A stretch of 63,955 nucleotides of DNA, filler included, from Octopus bimaculoides (lineage: Eukaryota): the NCBI RefSeq assembly GCF_001194135.2. It is 11 parts of 9 records of this genome, joined end to end, with 100 filler letters (N's around TTAATTAATTAA, not from the genome) between each part and the next. Parts side by side here need not be neighbours in the genome. Positions count along the whole stretch, not along the records: positions 24,509 to 36,127 come from NC_069003.1; 10 more parts are not named here. The stretch is one strand, 5' to 3'. A model generated the notes under the pieces. That model was not told the origin of the DNA and ran no database searches. It worked only from the letters and a program-made list of their open reading frames with translations. Shown in pieces: positions 24,401 through 35,558 of this stretch. The position numbers and the translations under genes are program-made. Position 1 is the stretch's first letter. Every line of letters begins with the position of its first letter.

Positions 24401-24980
24401 AACTACGCNNNNNNNNNNNNNNNNNNNNNNNNNNNNNNNNNNNNNNNNNNNNTTAATTAATTAANNNNNNNNNNNNNNNNNNNNNNNNNNNNNNNNNNNN
24501 NNNNNNNNGGGTGGTTAGCTGTAAAAAGTGAAGGTTATCAGTAAAACAGTATTTATCGCTCTTTGAAACGTTTTTAAATACACATTTAATGTAATCTATC
24601 TTTTGACATGCTGGCTACTGCTTAGAGCATATATACACAGCCATGTACTATACATACATACATACATATATACACACGCACAAGAACACACACGTATATA
24701 GTAATAATAAACACAGAAACAATTGGTATTTTAGGATTTATAAAACCGACACTTGTTTCGTTAAAACGACTACCATTATTCGGCAAGGCATGTAGCCAGA
24801 TGTATTATGATCGATTCTGAGAACAAACCTTTCGTTACACACGTACACCCACACACACACACACTATATGTATATGTATATGTATATACATATACATATG
24901 TAAAAAATCAAAAACCAAGGCAGAACGAGTATCTCAAGTCATTTAGAATAATTTAATTAATAGGGTAAGGTGAATTTGAA

Positions 24981-25045
24981 GTCTTACAGCCGTTTCAGGG
25001 ATAACCCAAGTGGCAGGTTAGCATGGATATACCGTCATCAGAGAC
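24981..25045 (-). ncRNA. Hammerhead ribozyme motif (left arm)
   Basis: Minus strand: GTCT-CTGATGA-c-GG..long stem II..CC-t-GAAA-CGGCTG-TA-AGAC; stem I GTCT/AGAC; GUA cleavage triplet. Confidence 0.62.
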
Positions 25046-25437
25046 AAGGTATGAATATTTTAGACAGAGAAAACTTACAATTTACAAGGAATAAAATTCA
25101 CAGTTTATAAGGAATAAAATAGAAGAATGAAGGAGTAAACAGAAGGTAATTATTAAAGGCAGTTAGAAGAATATAGGGAGGAGAGTAATGTTCACAACTC
25201 ATCTTCTTCCAGAGGATACGGATGTCGGTCGGTACTTCCATGAAAGTACAGGTCCTTAGTTACAATCGCAGGTAAATCGAGGCGGTATTTTGGCAGTATT
25301 TTGGCGTTATTCTCCTGCCTAAATTCTTCTAATTACCTTTACTCTTTATACGTCTATTTACTCCTTTATTCCTTATAAACTGTGAATTTTATTCTTTGCA
25401 AACTGTAAATTTTCTCTGTCTAAAATATTCATACCTT

Positions 25438-25502
25438 GTCTCTGATGACGGAATATCCATGCTAACTTGCCACTTGGGTTATCCCAGAAACGGCTGTAAG
25501 AC
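25438..25502 (+). ncRNA. Hammerhead ribozyme motif (right arm)
   Basis: GTCT(25438-41)-CTGATGA(25442-48)-c-stem II-GAAA(25487-90)-CGGCTGTA-AGAC(25499-502); helix III ACGGCTGT is self-complementary with G.U pairs; one extra nt before GAAA. Confidence 0.62.
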
Positions 25503-25648
25503 TTCAAATCCACCTTACCCTATTAATTAAATTATTCTAAATGACTTGAGATACTCGTTCTGCCTTGGTTTTTGACTTTTTCCAGAAGCAGTCACGAGAG
25601 CGACACATACAAAATTTAGCCGTCGTTGCGGCTTCTCTTAAACTTATA

Positions 25649-25706
<58 letters not shown>

Positions 25707-26586
25707 NNNNNNNNNNNNNNNNNNNNNNNNNNNNNNNNNNNNNNNNNNNNNNNNNNNNNNNNNNNNNNNNNNNNNNNNNNNNNNNNNNNNNNNNNNNNNN
25801 NNNNNNNNNNNNNNNNNNNNNNNNNNNNNNNNNNNNNNNNNNNNNNNNNNNNNNNNNNNNNNNNNNNNNNNNNNNNNNNNNNNNNNNNNNNNNNNNNNNN
25901 NNNNNNNNNNNNNNNNNNNNNNNNNNNNNNNNNNNNNNNNNNNNNNNNNNNNNNNNNNNNNNNNNNNNNNNNNNNNNNNNNNNNNNNNNNNNNNNNNNNN
26001 NNNNNNNNNNNNNNNNNNNNNNNNNNNNNNNNNNNNNNNNNNNNNNNNNNNNNNNNNNNNNNNNNNNNNNNNNNNNNNNNNNNNNNNNNNNNNNNNNNNN
26101 NNNNNNNNNNNNNNNNNNNNNNNNNNNNNNNNNNNNNNNNNNNNNNNNNNNNNNNNNNNNNNNNNNNNNNNNNNNNNNNNNNNNNNNNNNNNNNNNNNNN
26201 NNNNNNNNNNNNNNNNNNNNNNNNNNNNNNNNNNNNNNNNNNNNNNNNNNNNNNNNNNNNNNNNNNNNNNNNNNNNNNNNNNNNNNNNNNNNNNNNNNNN
26301 NNNNNNNNNNNNNNNNNNNNNNNNNNNNNNNNNNNNNNNNNNNNNNNNNNNNNNNNNTTCTTTCAAAGATAACATTTCGCTTGTTTATAACGGAAGAAAG
26401 GAATTTCGAAACCTTCCATCGTTTTAGAATTTTGAAATTTGATGAGTCTTGGAGACTTAATAGATTTAGATTTAGAGAATAAATTAATATTCTACTTATA
26501 GTTTCCAGTTTCACACACACATATTACATACATGCATATTTGCATGCATATATACGTACATACGTACGTACATAAATACATACATA

Positions 26587-26707
26587 CGAGAGGTGTATGA
26601 AAAGTCTTGAGCCTTCAGGGCATTTGAGCCTTGAAGTCTTGTACCTTCATCAGAAGTCTTGTACCATGTTTTGTCTTTTTGAAGCTCAAGATTTTCCATA
26701 CACCCTT
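26587..26707. mobile_element. Mariner-derived MITE, ~120 bp
   Basis: Imperfect TIRs ggtgtatgaaaagtcttgagccttca / tgaagctcaagattttccatacacc; TA at 26585-86 and 26708-09. Confidence 0.7.
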
Positions 26708-26840
26708 TAGACAGGGAAAACTTACAGTTTACGAGGAATAAAATTCACAGTTTGTAAGGAATAAAATAGAAAAGATAAAGGAATAAATAGAAGGTATTTA
26801 GTAAAGGCAGTTAGAATATAGGGAGGAGAATAATGTTCAC
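26706..26840 (-). repeat. Third partial copy of the foldback-arm sequence
   Basis: Matches 25058-25196 (tttagacag.gaaaacttaca.tttac.aggaataaaattcacagttt.taaggaataaaatag..ggaggaga.taatgttcac). Confidence 0.85.
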
Positions 26841-27364
26841 ACACACACACACATACATACATACATGCATGCATACATAGATACATACATACGTGGACAC
26901 ATACTTACGCACATATTTATCCACGCATATATCAACGCGTACATATATAATTATATCTACATATATCTACATATATCCTACTCACACATACAGACATACA
27001 GACAAACACATATTTATGTCTATGCGTTTGTGTGTACGTATGTGCATATGTACGCGTGCGCGCACAGACACTCACCCCACCCCCACCCTACACACACACA
27101 CACACCTTATCTTCTGAGTCGATGAACAATGTAATCTTAAGTGAAACAGAATAAAGATATGATGTTTCCTAGGTTCTGTGGGAATTTTTTTTCCCGACTG
27201 GTGGATCACCACATCACCACGTGATCATCCCACCTGTCCAATCTAATTACCGATATTGTTTTGTCTTCAAATATCTTCTCCCTCTCTCTCTCTCTCTTTG
27301 TCCTTACTCCCTCCCTTCCCCCTCTCTCCCTAGGAACTGCCTGTAAAGTGATTCTTACGGTCGA

Positions 27365-27510
27365 TTCTGAGTTCAAATTCCGCCGAGGTCGACTTTGCCT
27401 TTCATCCTTTCGAGGTCGATAAATCAAGTACCAATTGAGTGCTGGGGGTCGATGTAATCGACTATACCTTTCCCCCAAATTTCTACCTATAGTAGAAACT
27501 ATTATTATTA
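27365..27510 (+). mobile_element. SINE family 3 (3' part, with (ATT)n tail)
   Basis: ttctgagttcaaattccgccgaggtcgactttgcctttcatcc matches the reverse complement of 21451-21659 and 41783-41991. Confidence 0.85.
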
Positions 27511-27654
27511 TTATTTTATGTTTGACTTTTGTTTTGCATTTGTACAAGTTGGATCCAAGTCTCACCCAGAGACCTCAAGAGACAACAAGTTAGAAGTTCA
27601 TGTAGGTGTTATGCCTAGGGTACCATATATTTGGATTTGTACAGTTTTGTTCAA

Positions 27655-27723
<69 letters not shown>

Positions 27724-29305
27724 TTGACACCAGAATATAAAGGAAACATTGCAAATAAGAAGTTAACTGAATCAGCAAAAAATTTCTCGAGATTTAAATA
27801 CAGCAGAAGTTAACTTCAATATTGTATCTATAAGCTAGTCACCATTTCCGGATGTCTAAAGCCAGCTTCCTTCCTAATCTATTATAACTTGACTGAATTC
27901 CATTAAATGGAATACGGAAATTGGGTTTTATAACGTTTTATTGTTACTTAACGTATTATTAACGGTCTACTGGAGCAGGAACCCACTAGTGAAGCTCTAC
28001 GTGATCGCTCTACGCGCTAGAAATAGTAACAATGTTCTACTCTCATTCCCTACCGTCTTGAAAGTAAGGAAGACTATGTCGGATCTGACTCACACTTAAC
28101 AACCGACAAACGACCGAAGTAGAGAAGAAGAAATCTTTCGTTTGCGAAATCACATCTCGTCATCTTAAGGACGTATTTGATAAAAGAGTTGTATACAGCA
28201 AGGTTCAATGAAATATAAGAGAATAGTCGATCAGTCGGTGGTTCATATTCTGTTGGCTTAGAAAAAGGCATAATCGATAATATGGTCCTAGGTTCCTGAT
28301 GCACGAGAAAAAAATAGGATGGTCACGGCTGGAATGCATTTGATCAAAAGGCTTGCATAATCAAGGCTGATCTGGAGTTTAGACGATTGAGACAACAATA
28401 ACAAAGACAACGACGGCGACAGAATCAACAACAACGTTGAGAACGACAGCAAGAAGAAGAAGAAGAAGAAGAAGAACAACAACAACAACTACAAGAAGGA
28501 GAAACAGAGAAAGGAGGAGAAGGAAGAGAAGAGGAAAAGAGGTGCAACAATAACAATAGCAACAACAATCTGGAAGCAGAAAAGTGATTGTGTGGAAAGC
28601 AAAGAGAAGATTCTTTTTGGTTTCCACTGTTGTAATATCTTCTCTGAAAGGACGTCAATCTAGCCAGCTGTTTTAACGAGCTAATTAACTCGATTCCCCC
28701 CACCTCCCTCCCACTTCTCTCTCCCTTTCTTTCTCTCTTTCTTTTTGTTCTTTTCTTTCTTCAAACAAAACCTTTTTCGTCTTCATAACGTGGAACATTC
28801 AGAATAGGCCAGACGTTTGTTTACCATTCTAACATTCTGCACAACACACACACACGCACACACACACACACACGCACACACACATACGTACACAGATGAA
28901 CACAGATGAACACACACATAGATGCACATATACACACACAATAGATATACACATGAACTCACACACGTAGACACACACCCATAGACACGAGCGCACATAG
29001 TGAAATTAGTAATTCATACGCACACACACACACATACACACACACACACACACACACGAACATTAGACCAGTAAAGAAGACCGCCATGATGATAATGATG
29101 GACTCTTTCCTGGAGAGTGAGCATTGCACCTGGCGGAGTTTGTGTTGTGTTAACGATGTGTTGAATGCATCTGGTGAAACGTGTTTCACACAAGTTCACA
29201 CGGAGGCCACGGATGGATAAATAATAAAGTAATAAAACTTTCCACTCGAGGCCATCAACTCTGTTCTATAATCTAACCGATAGTTATAAAGGTGACATTC
29301 TTCCT

Positions 29306-29345
<40 letters not shown>

Positions 29346-29346
<1 letters not shown>

Positions 29347-29565
29347 AGTGGTTGCGTGGTAAGTAGGTTGCTTACCAGCCACATGGTTTTGGATTCAGTC
29401 CGACTGCGTGGCATCTCGGGCAAGTATCTTTTGCTATAGCCTCGGGTCGATCAAAGCCTTGTAAGTGGATTTGGTAGACGGAAACTGAAAGAATCCCCTC
29501 GTGTATGTATATATTGAATGTGTGTGTGCCTTTGTGTCTGCGCTTGACAACCGGTGTTGGTGTGT
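29346..29565 (+). mobile_element. SINE family 2 (5' half)
   Basis: gtggttgcgtggtaagtag..ggatttggtagacggaaactgaaagaa..gcttgacaaccggtgttggtgtg. Confidence 0.85.
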
Positions 29566-30311
29566 GAAAGACTTTTGAAATATGAAAGACTTTTGAAATA
29601 TGAAAGACTTTTCTCAAGTTTAAAATGTGGCATTGCTTTTGTTGTTTACATTCGAACGAGGGAGCTTTGTGTCTTTGTTAGAAACCAGTTCTTTCTTGAG
29701 AGAAAGAATTTAAATGATTAAAAACAGAAGACACACACACACACATGTATACACGTAGGAGTGTGTCTATGTGTGTATGTGTACGCATACACAGTAGAGC
29801 CTGTAATATATAACTAATATGTGTCTGTTTGTGTGTGTTTGCAGGAAGATGGATGTGTTTTTGAGTGTGTATCATTTAGGTTATTAGTTCGTTGAACGTA
29901 CGGTGTGTCAGGCCAAGCTGTAGCACCGCCCCTACAGTAATGGCTGTTCTATTTTTCGTGCGCTCTTTGATATATACCCAGGGACCCAACACTGCTGATG
30001 TTTTCAAGTTTCATATCACTAATTGTGAGATCAGTGAGATGATGTGAGCCGTTTTACCTTCGTTAGAAACGATTTCCAGATGGTTGATCTATAACATTAG
30101 AAGGATGTGCATCTCGGCAGCCTTTCAACGTCTCAAAGGGATGTTCTTAGTTGGCAACGCAACTGTTGCAAGTTTCACTGCCGACGTGAGGGTGTGAATG
30201 GGAACCCCACAGATTTCGTGCAAACGCCCCCTTCTTGTTGTTCGTTTTGTCATTACTACGACAAACTTTGGAACAAGACACTACGGCATGATTTCTATCT
30301 ATCTATATCTA

Positions 30312-30381
<70 letters not shown>

Positions 30382-30481
30382 TATCTATCTATCTATCTAT
30401 CTATCTGACTGTTTGTCTGTCTGTCTATGTATGTATGTATGTATGTATCTGTCTGTTTGTCTCTCAACAAATATGTGTGTG

Positions 30482-30530
<49 letters not shown>

Positions 30531-32702
30531 CTGTTTGTGTGTGTGAAATGGATATATATCTACCAATGTAATCATGAACCAGCCCGCGAATCGTCTTCCT
30601 GATTTCGAAACCAAAACCTTCATCACATCATCCTCTGCTGTCTTCAGTTGTATTTATATGAGAGACGGAAATGAATAGGTTTTCCGTCAGACTCGACGAC
30701 GAATATTCCAGTTGTCCAATCAATGAATTATTACGTAAGCGTGATGCGACTATGCTTACATTAATGATTTTAAAAATATTTCAGCAATATTTCGAAAGAA
30801 TTAATTGAAAATTGTGTATAACTGGTACTTATTTTTATCGATCGGGGAAGGGTTAACCATAGAATGTAAAGGGATAACTGAATTCCACAGTTACCTCTCC
30901 GCCCTCCTCTAATAATTATTTCAATCTTTTATTTTGTTTGCCGTCTACCAGTGTGTAACTGGTACTCAATCAACCATCACACACGACGTTGACGTTAGCA
31001 AGATTTGAACTCAGAACGTGTGTATTTCTGCATTTAGCCTTGTATATTACTATTCCCACCACCAGCACCTTTATTGCTGTTCTAAATTTCTACTCGGTTT
31101 TAGCGGTTTAAGTATTTTTAATTAAAACAAAAAGATTAAACGCGTATCTAGGTTTGGATGAAAATTATGGAATAATTGAATTAACGAGCGGGCTTTTGAT
31201 TAAATCGCTGCTTTAGTTCGGTGATTTTGTTAATGCACTCGGACAAAGGGTGAAGGGCATCAATTATTAGATTTGTTTCTTTGCTCTTGTAACGAAACAT
31301 TCGTGTTTAATTAAGAAATGTCTTAATCAAATACTTTCTTTCTGAGAATATATTACAGTGTTGCAATGAAATTGGTTGGCGTTACATGTTCAGCCGTTGT
31401 TAATGCTTCCAGAAGATCATGTTTCAGCGAAATCCATTCAGACGTGAGACTTTTCGCCAACATAATTCTTTTTCTTATAATGTTAATGTCTTATACGTTA
31501 CTCAATGGAGCAAGGTACTACTCATTACCTTTAAAGGTCCTCCTAGATCGGTGAGAATGATAAGGCAAATTCTTTGCCTTCATATCTGTCGGAAAATCAC
31601 TGAAAGAAATATTTTGTGACTGGTATTGGTTGTTGTTGTTGTTGTTGTTGTGATGATGATAGTGGTGTGGTGTTGAGGGTGACGGGAGTTGTGTTGATAA
31701 TGTGGGAAGGGGGTGATGGAGATGGTGGCGATGGTGACGATGGGGCTGTTTAGCACCAAATCAGAACCATGATAAAAAGCGTTCCAACCGTGACATACCT
31801 GCATATTTTTGGTCCATGTGTCCTTCATTTCTTAAAAACATTGTCATGGAAGACTAGTTGCTATTTCTAGCAGGTTGAGCAATGGTATAAAGGGTCGCTT
31901 CCCTGGCGGCGACGCTTCACCCTTTTTCCAACATAAAATCGCTCGATCACAGAGTTTCTCACAAAACACTCAGATGCAAAATACAATAATTTAATATAAG
32001 CTGGTTACCTAAAACTTAATAAACGAAAGATTAACTAATATTTCAGAAAGAGACATCTTTATGGGGGCCATTCTTGCTCCCTGCCTAAGTTCAAGGATGC
32101 CCTGACGTGGGTCCTTTTGTCTTTAGCGTGGAACTTATTCATTGCCCACTCGATTTTTGCTGTTCTCGTACCGATGTACTGGATGAACCCTTTCCCTTAC
32201 AGGTCCTACCTGCTATACCCTGGTGTCCTATCTAGGAAACACACCAGCTGTCAATATCAACCATTCAAATGACAGCAAATCCCGAGTCTAAAGAAAACTG
32301 TGTGACTTACGGAAAACCTTTGTAATACAATTCTAATGAGTTACCATGTAGTTTGTACAATTGCCAAATATTGACCCAGAAATTCTAAAAGATTTCATTC
32401 ATCCACTTTGAAATGATTGTTTGCTAACATTTCAATAAATACACACACCACCCCGTACGCCACCCCAGCGCTTATTATCATTAAAGTGTCTGTTTTGAAA
32501 GGGAGGCGGGGGTGAGGATGTTGCCAGTGGGACAGCAAGAAACAAGTTACAGAAACACAACACAAAACAAATAGAATATATATGTAGGAGGTTGTGTATA
32601 TAAGGTTATATACGTATGTGTGCATGTGTGTATGTATGCGTGTATATATGTATGTATATAGGTGTATATATGAATGAATGTTTGTATGACGATATATTTC
32701 TT

Positions 32703-32743
<41 letters not shown>

Positions 32744-32753
32744 NNNNNNNNNN

Positions 32754-32800
<47 letters not shown>

Positions 32801-34188
32801 GTGTAAACAAGCGGACTGAAAGTATATAATTTCAATACATACACATTGAAATATATATATATATATATATATATAATATTTGTGTGTGTGTGAGTGTGCG
32901 TATGTGTATGTGTGTGTACGTGTACACGCACTCACATACATATATACACAGAGAAACATACAGATAGATATTAAAGTGTATATACGCGCCCCACTGTAAG
33001 TTGAATGGATCAGCCTTCAGCTGTCACGTTTTGGCCATTACGCTGTGTCAAAGGTGAAAGTGTGACGGGTGGTGGAGGTTGGGTGTGTGACTCGTTCCGA
33101 CGCGATGGGGTCCAAGCGAAATACCAGCTCGCGGTGTGCGGACACCGCGTCATACACGAATGCATGGGAAGCTGGTATTCATGTGCTTATGTGTGTAACA
33201 CTGTTTGCTGGCTGTATACACACCATGTGTGTGTGTGTGTGTCTGTGTGTGTGTGTGAGTGAGTGTGAGAGGTANNNNNNNNNNNNNNNNNNNNNNNNNN
33301 NNNNNNNNNNNNNNNNNNNNNNNNNNNNNNNNNNNNNNNNNNNNNNNNNNNNNNNNNNNNNNNNNNNNNNNNNNNNNNNNNNNNNNNNNNNNNNNNNNNN
33401 NNNNNNNNNNNNNNNNNNNNNNNNNNNNNNNNNNNNNNNNNNNNNNNNNNNNNNNNNNNNNNNNNNNNNNNNNNNNNNNNNNNNNNNNNNNNNNNNNNNN
33501 NNNNNNNNNNNNNNNNNNNNNNNNNNNNNNNNNNNNNNNNNNNNNNNNNNNNNNNNNNNNNNNNNNNNNNNNNNNNNNNNNNNNNNNNNNNNNNNNNNNN
33601 NNNNNNNNNNNNNNNNNNNNNNNNNNNNNNNNNNNNNNNNNNNNNNNNNNNNNNNNNNNNNNNNNNNNNNNNNNNNNNNNNNNNNNNNNNNNNNNNNNNN
33701 NNNNNNNNNNNNNNNNNNNNNNNNNNNNNNNNNNNNNNNNNNNNNNNNNNNNNNNNNNNNNNNNNNNNNNNNNNNNNNNNNNNNNNNNNNNNNNNNNNNN
33801 NNNNNNNNNNNNNNNNNNNNNNNNNNNNNNNNNNNNNNNNNNNNNNNNNNNNNNNNNNNNNNNNNNNNNNNNNNNNNNNNNNNNNNNNNNNNNNNNNNNN
33901 NNNNNNNNNNNNNNNNNNNNNNNNNNNNNNNNNNNNNNNNNNNNNNNNNNNNNNNNNNNNNNNNNNNNNNNNNNNNNNNNNNNNNNNNNNNNNNNNNNNN
34001 NNNNNNNNNNNNNNNNNNNNNNNNNNNNNNNNNNNNNNNNNNNNNNNNNNNNNNNNNNNNNNNNNNNNTATATATATATATATATATATATAAGCATATA
34101 TGTATATATATATACAAGAATGAATTTTATAGAAGTTTGTATGTATATAGCGACCGTGAACATATCTGTGTGCTGATACATGTGTGTG

Positions 34189-34248
<60 letters not shown>

Positions 34249-34335
34249 GTGTGTGTATACGTTACGTGTATATCAAGGTGCCCAGAAAGGGCACGAGAGG
34301 TAGAAAGACAGACAGACAGACAGACAGATAGATTG

Positions 34336-34390
<55 letters not shown>

Positions 34391-34499
34391 GTGGTAGTTA
34401 CACGTGCCTATATACATACATATATACATGCATACATACAAACATAAATATATACATACATACACACACACACACATATATACAGTATATGTACATTAT

Positions 34500-34531
<32 letters not shown>

Positions 34532-34666
34532 GTAAATACAGACACATGCATGCATGCATACGTGCGTGCGCCTGTGTCCCTGTCTGCACGAAGCCGTGTT
34601 TAAATGTTGGTCGGGTGCCTTTCTTCTAAACATCCATCTCTCACAGAAACCAAAATATAATGCATT

Positions 34667-35095
34667 CTACTCACTGTGTCGAATCTTCCTGGCGGTGACG
34701 AGCGGAGGACATCGTAAACCCCCATTTCTTGACTTCTGTAAGCGGGACCTATATCTCACTTGGAAGGCTCCGGACCGGGTCCAGGACGACCAGGCACTGA
34801 CGACGCAGTCGAATCGGCCGACACGCCGCCGCGCTTTCAGCCGTGCGCTGCTGTTTCGAGCCAGCGGCCCGGTCAGACCATCAGCAGCATTATTACTATG
34901 TTTTGTCTTTAATGATGACGACGATGATGACAATAATGAAGAGGAAGAGGAGGCAGAAGATGACGACGACGATGTTAATGGCATTAACTGTAGAGACAAA
35001 ACACAGTTAGGGTAGACCACTGTCACAATAAACAAACCCCAACATCCAAGAAGGGGAAGATGCAGACTGGGACCCACTGTGCGTTTGATCCCCAT
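34667..35095 (-). CDS. Putative secreted precursor with reduced thrombospondin type-1 (spondin-like TSR) domain; may splice at 34675
   Basis: ATG in gatATGG context; hydrophobic LLGCWGLFIVTVVY; Ser-rich linker; basic RLKARRR; DCVVSAWSSW..QVRYRSR..RNGGLRCPPL carries the TSR WSxW, RxRxR and NGGxxCPxL motifs; GC/CpG-rich island; donor CACA|GTGAGT at 34675/34674; alternative acceptor ctaac..tttgtctctacag| before 34987. Confidence 0.7.
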   Translation of the reverse strand: MGIKRTVGPSLHLPLLGCWGLFIVTVVYPNCVLSLQLMPLTSSSSSSASSSSSLLSSSSSSLKTKHSNNAADGLTGPLARNSSARLKARRRVGRFDCVVSAWSSWTRSGAFQVRYRSRLQKSRNGGLRCPPLVTARKIRHSE

Positions 35096-35196
35096 ATCGT
35101 CGGTCGATGTTATGTTTCGGATTTTCGGCCTGTTCCAAACATTGACAAACCCGACGAAGATAACAGTGCTCGGTGGGGGGCGCTGTTGATAATAAC

Positions 35197-35231
<35 letters not shown>

Positions 35232-35342
35232 TGATGATGTTGTTTGAGGTGTAGTTGATGAGGTTCCTAAAGCTGTTGTTATCGCTGCTGTAGTTGTTTC
35301 TAGCTGTTGTTGTTGTTGTTGTTGCTGTTGCTGTTGTTGTTG

Positions 35343-35374
<32 letters not shown>

Positions 35375-35558
35375 GGTGGTGGTGGTAGAGGAGGGGTTGC
35401 TGCTGGTGTTGAATGATGCCGTTGTTTAAAGCAGTTGTCGACCAAACAACAGCTACTTTGCCTGCTCCACAGTCATCTGTGAACTGTTGCTTTTTAATAC
35501 ACATATATAATATAATGATGTAAGCAACAACAACAACAACAATAATAAAGACGACGAC

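What the first reader, a model, noticed from the sequence alone, without database searches (positions are those of the whole stretch)
34667..35095. Putative secreted precursor releasing a cationic, single-disulfide 'minimal TSR' peptide
Architecture: hydrophobic leader, Ser-rich spacer, basic cluster (R85-LKARRR91, R91-V-G-R94), then a ~50-aa domain. The domain keeps the TSR Trp ladder (WSSW, also a C-mannosylation motif), the Arg ladder (RYRSR) and NGGxxCPxL. It has lost the CSxxCG loop and terminal cysteines, keeping only C97 and C129. In spondin-type TSRs the first Cys pairs with the Cys of this CP motif, so the retained pair is self-consistent and suggests a selected reduced fold rather than decay. 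The mature part has many Arg/Lys and almost no acidic residues, compatible with heparin-binding, antimicrobial or signalling roles. I cannot assign it to a named family.
Basis: partly seen in the sequence, partly recalled or inferred. Interest (0 to 1): 0.75.

Follow-up and report, generated by a model that had tools for sequence, protein, structure and literature searches.

The report
First exon of octopus TSR–VWA gene
The flagged reading frame is not a small peptide precursor but the first coding exon of an annotated, uncharacterised Octopus bimaculoides gene for a secreted protein. That protein joins an unusually stripped-down, two-cysteine thrombospondin repeat to a divergent von Willebrand A domain, and the family was found only in octopuses, cuttlefish and their relatives.

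Summary
It has a hydrophobic leader, a Ser-rich spacer and a basic cluster, then a TSR-like module with only C97 and C129.

Residues 1–140 are identical to the N-terminus of XP_014782974.1 (LOC106878303 isoform X1, Octopus bimaculoides, 394 aa). The ORF's stop codon is intronic. The exon ends at CAC A|GTGAGT (34675/34674) and splices to two further exons, outside this piece, that encode a divergent VWA domain. The same junction is present in Argonauta and Sepia genomic DNA. Spliced Sepia esculenta mRNA contigs join the TSR to the VWA domain.

The two-Cys TSR is real and selected:
- Profile comparison with canonical spondin TSRs gives E = 6e-18.
- dN/dS is 0.05–0.12.
- The Cys pattern is identical across four octopod and decapodiform orthologues.

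The upstream basic cluster is absent in the decapodiform orthologues, so release of a free peptide is not supported.

The gene also has a second, alternative first exon. It carries its own signal peptide and a paralogous two-Cys TSR. Function is unknown. The best inference is a cationic, glycan-binding extracellular matrix or adhesion protein.

Verdict: a new variant of a known kind, of modest interest.

The parts
34675..35095 (-). Coding exon 1 of LOC106878303 isoform X1 (421 nt: 140 codons plus the first base of codon 141)
   Evidence: 140/140 aa identical to XP_014782974.1. The same exon boundary is seen in Argonauta hians and Sepia.
34994..35095 (-). Start codon (35093–35095, context GACGATATGG) and predicted signal peptide, residues 1–34 (MGIKR + hydrophobic core + VLS|LQ)
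   Evidence: Hydrophobic 12-residue maximum of KD 2.3 at residues 16–27. All orthologues and the alternative exon have an equivalent N-terminal hydrophobic leader. The cleavage site is inferred from the −3/−1 rule; SignalP was not run.
34913..34975 (-). Ser-rich low-complexity spacer (residues 41–61)
   Evidence: This region is not alignable between orthologues: Thr/Pro-rich in Argonauta, different again in decapodiforms.
34814..34843 (-). Basic cluster RLKARRRVGR (residues 85–94); RVGR is a minimal furin-type RxxR
   Evidence: It is conserved as RxxR in the octopods (O. vulgaris, Argonauta) but absent in the decapodiform orthologues.
34676..34807 (-). Reduced spondin-type (group 2) TSR module, C97–H140. 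It holds C97 (34805–34807), WSSW (34781–34792), RYRSR (34742–34756), NGGLRCPPL (34700–34726) and C129 (34709–34711).
   Evidence: Pfam TSP1_spondin is sub-threshold. hhalign gives 99%, E 5.8e-18. AF2 gives pLDDT 88 and the Foldseek top hits are all TSRs. dN/dS is 0.05–0.12.
34669..34674 (-). Splice donor GTGAGT of intron 1 (phase 1)
   Evidence: Codon 141 is A|AY = Asn in the mature mRNA or protein models. The O. sinensis exon 2 acceptor reads TTTTCAG|AT.
34667..34669 (-). TAG that closes the mechanical ORF. It is intronic and not the protein's stop.
24509..34668 (-). 5' part of intron 1 (more than 10 kb, microsatellite-rich, three N gaps). No further exon of the gene is detectable here.
   Evidence: tblastn of six family proteins against the piece finds only exon 1. 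N runs lie at 25707–26357, 32744–32753 and 33275–34068.

Best explanation
The ORF is the first coding exon of Octopus bimaculoides LOC106878303 (isoform X1; UniProt A0A0L8G9S4, 'VWFA domain-containing protein').

Shown:
- The exon encodes the start codon, a signal-peptide-like leader, a fast-evolving low-complexity spacer and one TSR module.
- It ends at a phase-1 donor (A|GTGAGT).
- It is spliced to two more exons, outside this piece, that encode a conserved linker and a divergent VWA domain. The product is a 394-aa protein.
- The TSR is a spondin-type (group 2) repeat that has lost Cys 2, 3, 5 and 6.
- It keeps only the pair that, in the Tan et al. group-2 scheme, ties the start of strand A to strand C, together with the Trp ladder (WSxW) and the Arg ladder (RxRxR).
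- This form is conserved under strong purifying selection in every orthologue recovered, from octopods and decapodiforms.

Inferred:
- The protein is secreted.
- The stacked Trp/Arg core plus one disulfide holds the small three-stranded module together.
- Its very basic surface (net about +9; basic residues on the BC loop and strand C) binds sulfated glycans or other polyanions, as described for basic TSRs of F-spondin and ADAMTS-4.
- The VWA domain has an altered MIDAS (DxSxC, and no TDG-type Asp). It would provide a protein–protein contact that probably does not depend on canonical metal-ion coordination.
- Seven invariant Cys in the mature chain is an odd number and may allow a disulfide-linked dimer.
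- Overall it would act as a cationic matrix, adhesion or bridging protein, not as a released peptide.

The gene also has a second, upstream alternative first exon with its own leader and a paralogous two-Cys TSR. Two TSR 'heads' can therefore be put on one VWA body.
For: Identity and splicing:
- 140/140 identity to XP_014782974.1.
- The donor is at the same codon in Octopus, Argonauta and Sepia genomic DNA.
- The Sepia esculenta mRNA reads AAGA|ATAAATAT where the genomic DNA reads AAGA|GTGAGT.
- The mRNA contigs come from larval RNA-seq runs; SRR25114244 is listed in PMC10442824.

Domains and selection:
- VWA is above Pfam's gathering score in all full-length members (27–33 bits against 23.8), covering profile positions 4–172 of 174.
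- TSR homology.
- The TSR fold model has pLDDT 88 and the best PDB matches are TSRs of C6, C8, C9, UNC5A and TSP-1.
- Two-Cys pattern and motif conservation.
- dN/dS is 0.05–0.12.
- Predicted disulfide pattern of group-2 TSRs and GAG binding by basic TSRs: PMC2173040.
- Charge figures.
- MIDAS and Cys positions.

Alternative first exon:
- It appears in the RefSeq X2 models of O. bimaculoides and O. sinensis.
- It is found as an intact ORF with a donor 7.4 kb upstream of the X1 exon in Argonauta.
Against: - Nothing about function was tested. There is no tissue expression, no proteomic detection and no described homologue. The octopus mucus proteome's VWFA proteins are other genes.
- The full-length AF2 model failed (pLDDT 33 with 4 sequences). 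A family profile finds nothing in PDB sequences. The VWA assignment therefore rests on a modest Pfam score.
- The TSR model was built on an alignment dominated by canonical TSRs. It is a homology model, not independent evidence. The C97–C129 distance could not be read out.
- With five further Cys downstream, the pairing C97–C129 is inferred, not shown.
- The signal peptide is judged by eye and by hydropathy only.
- The X1 exon was not found in the O. sinensis locus. A 100-N gap lies in the expected intron.
Confidence: 0.85

Rival explanations
1. The locus makes a small secreted precursor. A free, cationic, single-disulfide ~45–50-aa TSR peptide is released and acts as an antimicrobial, heparin-binding or signalling peptide. 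Release would occur either because translation ends at the TAG (intron retention) or by furin-type cleavage at RVGR|F and RKIR|H.
For: - RxxR motifs flank the module in O. bimaculoides (RVGR at 91–94, RKIR at 136–139).
- The upstream one is kept in O. vulgaris and Argonauta.
- Reading through the donor hits a stop after two codons in Octopus, Argonauta and Sepia.
- The module is very basic.
Against: - The annotated product and the only transcript contigs recovered are spliced TSR–VWA forms.
- The 136-aa '…SE*' ORFs of Sepia come from different runs (ERR accessions with contig numbers in the millions). They look like genomic reads, not mRNA.
- The upstream basic site is absent in the decapodiform orthologues (PIDRKDC, PIDRTDC).
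- RKIR/RKIK aligns with strand C of the TSR itself, so it is probably structural.
- A stop soon after a phase-1 GTRAGTA donor is expected from the donor consensus alone.
Confidence: 0.07
2. A decaying or pseudogenised TSR exon: a relic of a six-Cys TSR gene that no longer makes a functional product.
For: - Four of the six canonical Cys are missing.
- The Pfam score is below threshold.
- The surroundings are repeat-rich and gapped.
Against: - The ORF is intact, with a conserved start, donor and Cys pair, in all four orthologues from octopods and decapodiforms.
- dN/dS is 0.05–0.12 with saturated synonymous sites.
- It is transcribed and spliced in Sepia esculenta larvae.
Confidence: 0.01
3. An internal exon of a large multi-TSR protein such as SCO-spondin, hemicentin or an ADAMTS-like protein.
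For: - The best phmmer hits by summed score are proteins with 10–37 TSRs.
- An AG acceptor-like site sits at 34988/34987.
- One automated O. vulgaris model (CAI9739457.1, 536 aa) joins upstream sequence into the exon near that point.
Against: - The closest relative by identity (65%, one matched stretch) and all other orthologues are 385–426-aa single-TSR proteins that start with their own leader.
- No other TSR exon is present in the piece.
- The Argonauta gene has three coding exons within 6.3 kb.
Confidence: 0.01

Closest known systems
Spondin-type (group 2) thrombospondin type 1 repeat (Pfam PF19028 TSP1_spondin; F-spondin, mindin, UNC5, N-terminal TSRs of complement C6–C9)
   Same: - A Cys precedes the WSxW Trp ladder.
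- It has the RxRxR Arg ladder and the GGxxCPxL turn.
- The predicted fold has three strands.
- The retained Cys pair corresponds to the strand A–strand C disulfide predicted for group 2.
- The exon ends in phase 1.
   Different: - It lacks the CSxxCG loop and both C-terminal Cys: two of six Cys, one disulfide instead of three.
- It therefore also lacks the CxxS/TCxxG O-fucosylation site.
- It scores below Pfam's threshold (15–26 bits against 41).
- Among 1452 TSR domains in the nearest 150 hit proteins, only 2 show the same C1+C4-only pattern.
Apicomplexan TRAP/MIC2-type adhesins (VWA + TSR)
   Same: The same two domain kinds sit in one extracellular protein. The TSR is a group-2 type with a basic, glycan-binding face (PMC2173040). 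MIC2 TSRs are among the structural matches.
   Different: - The order is reversed: TRAP has VWA then TSR.
- TRAP is membrane-anchored and has an intact MIDAS. Those two points are from my own knowledge of the family and were not tested here.
- No sequence relationship beyond the domain level was found.
Midkine / pleiotrophin (HB-GAM): small cationic heparin-binding proteins built of TSR-like half-domains
   Same: They are very basic, TSR-derived β-sheet modules with a reduced or altered cysteine scheme.
   Different: Those are free-standing small proteins with several disulfides per domain. Here the module is the N-terminal domain of a 394-aa chain. No sequence match to them was seen in any search.
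VWA-domain extracellular matrix proteins of molluscs (for example Pif/BMSP shell-matrix proteins; PMC11291548 listed)
   Same: Secreted molluscan proteins with a VWA domain.
   Different: Those combine VWA with chitin-binding domains and have no TSR. The family profile here retrieved no non-cephalopod protein at all.

Membership tests
Thrombospondin type 1 repeat, spondin type (PF19028) | Curated Pfam gathering score (41 bits) | tested here: not met
   22.8–25.9 bits for the window ORF; 15–20 bits for orthologues.
Thrombospondin type 1 repeat, spondin type (PF19028) | Homology to canonical TSRs by profile–profile comparison | tested here: met
   hhalign probability 99%, E 5.8e-18, 45 aligned columns. 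phmmer gives 264 hits at E ≤ 0.001; 149 of the 150 best listed match by several repeats.
Thrombospondin type 1 repeat, spondin type (PF19028) | Trp ladder (WxxW) and Arg ladder (RxRxR) forming the CWR core | tested here: met
   WSSW 102–105 and RYRSR 114–118. W, W and two R are invariant in all six family modules.
Thrombospondin type 1 repeat, spondin type (PF19028) | Six cysteines / three disulfides | tested here: not met
   Only C1 and C4 are present. The C2 position holds R or L and the C5 position holds I or L in the family.
Thrombospondin type 1 repeat, spondin type (PF19028) | Three-stranded layered fold | tested here: inconclusive
   The AF2 model has pLDDT 88 and TMq 0.6–0.75 to solved TSRs. 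However, the alignment was dominated by canonical TSRs, and no experimental structure or Cys–Cys distance is available.
von Willebrand factor type A domain (PF00092) | Pfam gathering score over the full domain | tested here: met
   28.6 bits against 23.8 for XP_014782974.1, profile positions 4–172 of 174; 27–33 bits in four other members. This domain is encoded outside the window piece.
von Willebrand factor type A domain (PF00092) | Complete MIDAS (DxSxS … T … D) | tested here: not met
   The first motif reads D206-D-S208-L-C210. 'LVLSSW' stands where lTDG is usual. The mapping to the Pfam consensus is from the reported profile coordinates and my recollection of the consensus.
von Willebrand factor type A domain (PF00092) | Rossmann-like α/β fold | tested here: inconclusive
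   The full-length AF2 model is unusable (pLDDT 33). The family profile finds no PDB sequence.
   The stop is intronic. The spliced product is 394 aa.
   The upstream RxxR is present only in octopods. Decapodiforms have PIDRKDC or PIDRTDC.
   A hydrophobic leader is present in all members. No dedicated predictor is available.

The most novel reading that the evidence does not exclude
Coleoid cephalopods evolved a lineage-restricted secreted protein in which a TSR pared down to a single disulfide serves as an exchangeable ligand-binding head. Two alternative first exons, each with its own promoter, signal peptide and divergent two-Cys TSR, are spliced onto one common VWA body. X1 is strongly constrained and very basic; X2 evolves faster and is less basic. 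This gives two binding specificities from one gene. In octopods the X1 head could additionally be shed at its flanking RxxR sites as a free cationic TSR peptide.
Probability: 0.2. Interest if true: 0.5.

Novelty: new variant of a known kind. Interest (0 to 1): 0.3.

Why it matters
The result corrects a tempting misreading. An ORF that ends in a stop two codons past a splice donor is not a mini-gene.

It also adds an unannotated domain to a RefSeq/UniProt entry that is currently labelled only 'VWFA domain-containing'.

The module itself is a natural experiment in how little a TSR needs. Here the Trp/Arg ladder and one of three disulfides have been kept under strong purifying selection in every octopod and decapodiform orthologue recovered. 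This is relevant to TSR folding, and to the POFUT2-dependent quality control that needs the missing CxxS/TCxxG site.

The family was recovered only from coleoid cephalopods, and it has paired alternative TSR first exons. That makes it a candidate lineage-specific extracellular matrix or adhesion component. Nothing here points to a function of wide importance.

Tried and rejected
1. The first word-indexed homologue search with the 142-aa ORF found only one weak TSR hit (E 0.87). The exact-sequence look-up of the read-through ORF found nothing, because databases hold the spliced product.
2. I first read the donor as CAG|GTGAGT (phase 2). Re-reading the bases, and the Asn at codon 141 in the orthologues, showed it is A|GTGAGT (phase 1).
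3. tblastn of six family proteins against the piece found no downstream exon. Any exon hidden in the N gaps cannot be excluded.
4. The AF2 model of TSR+linker+VWA with a 4-sequence alignment was unusable (pLDDT 33).
5. A family profile against PDB sequences gave no hit even at E ≤ 10.
6. Exact look-ups of the O. vulgaris protein and the O. bimaculoides X2 protein found no genomic locus on record.
7. Literature searches:
   - No paper mentions LOC106878303, LOC115223402, XP_014782974 or A0A0L8G9S4.
   - The 'VWFA domain-containing proteins' of the octopus skin-mucus proteome are other genes, A0A0L8G3A3 and A0A0L8HJM8.
   - The TSR mention in a cephalopod venom preprint concerns cephalotoxins.
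8. The 136-aa '…ARKIKSE*' ORFs in Sepia looked at first like a short isoform. They come from different runs with genomic-style contigs.
9. P0157 ('MFNIFSDRQ…') is a genomic read-through of the exon 2 acceptor, not a third 5' exon.
10. No tRNA-like sequence was found in the piece to explain the interspersed repeat.

Full report
**What is in the sequence**

The minus-strand ORF 34667..35095 (142 aa) exists as described.
- Cys at 18, 31, 97 and 129
- basic run R85–R94
- WSSW at 102–105
- RYRSR at 114–118
- NGGLRCPPL at 124–132

The ORF is the only GC-rich (50%), coding-looking island in an 11.6-kb piece. The rest consists of microsatellites, interspersed repeats and three N gaps. The 47-aa TSR part has 10 K/R against 1 D/E, pI 11.8 and net charge about +9.

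The last bases before the stop read CGA CAC A|GTGAGT AG. This is a consensus splice donor, so the TAG belongs to an intron.

**Is it a TSR?**

Four tests bear on this.
- Pfam's TSP1_spondin model aligns residues 97–136 to profile positions 1–45 of 52. The score is 22.8–25.9 bits, below the curated 41.
- phmmer of the exon against 1.84 billion representative proteins gave 264 hits at E ≤ 0.001. Of the 150 best listed, 149 match by several TSR repeats each.
- A profile of the six family modules against a profile of canonical spondin-type TSRs gave 99% probability and E = 5.8e-18. The family has Arg/Leu at the second-Cys position and Ile/Leu at the fifth-Cys position.
- An AlphaFold2 model of the module had pLDDT 88. 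It was built on 119 TSR sequences. Its best PDB matches are all TSRs (complement C6, C8β, C9, UNC5A, TSP-1, Sema5A, MIC2, properdin, F-spondin), with TM-scores of 0.6–0.75 normalised to the query.

Because that alignment is dominated by canonical TSRs, the model is a homology model and not independent proof. The Cys–Cys distance could not be read out.

Tan et al. 2002 predict from alignment that in F-spondin-type (group 2) TSRs the top disulfide joins the beginning of strand A to strand C (PMC2173040). Those are the two positions retained here.

**What gene is it?**

One phmmer hit stood out. P0044 is 385 aa, 65% identical, and matches by a single stretch. It has the same two-Cys module, followed by about 250 more residues.

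Searching with P0044, and then with a family profile, retrieved only seven clusters. Every cluster whose species could be identified is from a coleoid cephalopod: Octopus vulgaris, O. sinensis, Argonauta hians, Acanthosepion pharaonis and Sepia esculenta. The cluster listing added XP_014782974.1, 'uncharacterized protein LOC106878303 isoform X1 [Octopus bimaculoides]', 394 aa (UniProt A0A0L8G9S4, 'VWFA domain-containing protein').

Its first 140 residues are identical, 140 of 140, to the window's exon. Residue 141 is Asn in the protein (A|AY) and Ser in the read-through ORF (A|GT). The window is therefore O. bimaculoides. The ORF is coding exon 1, at 35095–34675.

**Proof of the splice**

- In Argonauta hians the gene has three coding exons. 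The first ends at …CGC CAC A|GTAAGT, the same codon.
- In Sepia, genomic contigs read …ATT AAG A|GTGAGTAA.
- The S. esculenta mRNA contigs read …ATT AAG A|AT AAA TAT… and continue into the rest of the protein.
- Two of those mRNA runs are larval RNA-seq of S. esculenta (SRR25114244 in PMC10442824 and SRR31864755 in PMC11917092).
- The O. sinensis exon 2 acceptor is TTTTCAG|AT CGT CAA, which completes codon 141 as AAT.
- No other exon of the gene lies in the piece. Intron 1 is therefore longer than 10 kb, or the next exon sits in an N gap.

**Architecture of the protein**

All full-length members share this layout:
- a hydrophobic N-terminal leader
- a non-conserved low-complexity spacer
- the two-Cys TSR
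- a conserved linker (LxFxExSRRFL…IRGG)
- a VWA domain that passes Pfam's gathering score (27–33 bits against 23.8) over almost the whole profile

The VWA domain is very divergent. The family profile finds no other VWA protein in the word-indexed database and nothing in PDB sequences. A four-sequence AF2 run failed, with pLDDT 33.

The first MIDAS motif reads D206-x-S208-x-C210. The usual TDG is replaced by SSW.

The mature chain has seven invariant Cys, two in the TSR and five downstream. Its calculated pI is 10.25.

**Selection**

Nei–Gojobori estimates were made over the 42-codon module.

| Comparison | dN/dS |
|---|---|
| Octopus–Argonauta | 0.08 |
| Octopus–Sepia | 0.12 |
| the two decapodiform sequences | 0.05 |

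Synonymous sites are at or near saturation in these comparisons. The Cys pair, both Trp, the Arg ladder and NGGLxCPPLVTARK are conserved across the four orthologues.

Such forms are rare but not unique. Among 1452 TSR domains in the 150 best-hit proteins, 1078 have six Cys and 175 have four. Only two repeats keep just C1 and C4. They are penultimate repeats of two multi-TSR proteins recovered from environmental or sequencing-run assemblies; one has a marine meta-omic cluster member.

**Processing**

The basic cluster gives RVGR|F in O. bimaculoides. Equivalent RxxR motifs occur in O. vulgaris and Argonauta. The decapodiform orthologues have PIDRKDC and PIDRTDC instead.

The downstream RKIR (RKIK in Sepia esculenta) aligns with strand C of the TSR.

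The stop just after the donor occurs in all three lineages. However, it follows from the GTRAGTA consensus read in phase 1.

Release of a free peptide is therefore not excluded in octopods, but nothing supports it.

**A second first exon**

RefSeq isoform X2 of O. bimaculoides and the O. sinensis model replace exon 1 with a different exon. It encodes its own leader and a paralogous two-Cys TSR (CLVSKWSQWERYDEIFFVRRR…GGKECPF…).

- It scores 15 bits on TSP1_spondin.
- It ends in the same phase: G|GT, completing GAT.
- In O. sinensis it lies 46 kb upstream of exon 2.
- In Argonauta an intact homologue lies 7.4 kb upstream of the X1 exon.
- Its dN/dS is about 0.44 between these two species, and the adjoining intron shows no similarity.

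It is therefore conserved but evolves faster than X1. It is not in the window piece. By the Argonauta order it should lie beyond coordinate 36127.

The X1 exon was not found in the O. sinensis locus. That locus has a 100-N gap in the expected intron.

**Mechanism (inferred)**

The most likely product is a secreted, strongly cationic TSR–VWA protein.
- The TSR's basic BC loop and strand C would bind sulfated glycans, by analogy with the basic TSRs of F-spondin and ADAMTS-4 (PMC2173040).
- The MIDAS-altered VWA domain would make a protein contact.
- The odd Cys count may allow covalent dimers.

No expression, proteomic or literature evidence on function was found.

**Verdict**

The gene is already annotated but uncharacterised, and its TSR module is not annotated. 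I rate it a new variant of a known kind, with interest about 0.3.

Noticed in passing
outside the window piece; L005 2598-2813 (Argonauta hians), L013 9968-10186 (Octopus sinensis): The gene has an alternative first coding exon (RefSeq isoform X2). It carries its own signal peptide and a second, paralogous two-Cys TSR. It lies upstream of the X1 exon in Argonauta and ends in the same splice phase. Its dN/dS is about 0.44, against 0.08 for the X1 module.
   Followed up: partly
L013 (O. sinensis) 10192-56031, N gap 42119-42218: The orthologue of the window's exon (X1) is not detectable anywhere in the 83-kb O. sinensis locus, although O. vulgaris and O. bimaculoides have it. A 100-N assembly gap sits in the intron where it is expected. 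That may explain why RefSeq has only the X2-type model for that species.
   Followed up: partly
window 24899-25118 and 25365-25584; also 26706-26771: There is an inverted repeat with 220-nt arms, 95% complementary and 246 nt apart, inside intron 1. A third partial copy (66 nt, 94%) lies 1.6 kb away. It is probably an interspersed element (MITE or SINE-like). No tRNA-like sequence was found.
   Followed up: partly
window 35189-35386: Three trinucleotide arrays sit 95–290 nt upstream of the start codon on the gene's strand, in the likely 5' UTR or promoter: (ATT)n, (CAA)n and (CCA)n. They create long spurious ORFs in other frames (poly-Q, poly-T, poly-I).
   Followed up: no
window 34554-35015 (+): A 153-aa ORF lies antisense to exon 1 (…NDDDDDDNNEEEEEAEDDDDD…). 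It mirrors the Ser-rich spacer and has no homologue. It is treated as a by-product of the coding strand's composition.
   Followed up: no
P0100 residues 582-633; P0142 residues 374-427 (multi-TSR proteins from environmental or run assemblies, one search hits): Two multi-TSR proteins each have one repeat, the penultimate, that keeps only the first and fourth Cys (for example CKVSKWAAWNAHKGNKLQRKRSIRVFPKFGGKKCPVLVQTKVH). The same reduction has therefore arisen independently outside animals.
   Followed up: partly
P0153 / P0159 (O. vulgaris models CAI9739458.1, CAI9739457.1): The O. vulgaris models contain a 25-aa tandem duplication (AAGDPRRARNSSARP…RVGR twice) just before the TSR. These may be annotation or assembly artefacts.
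   Followed up: no
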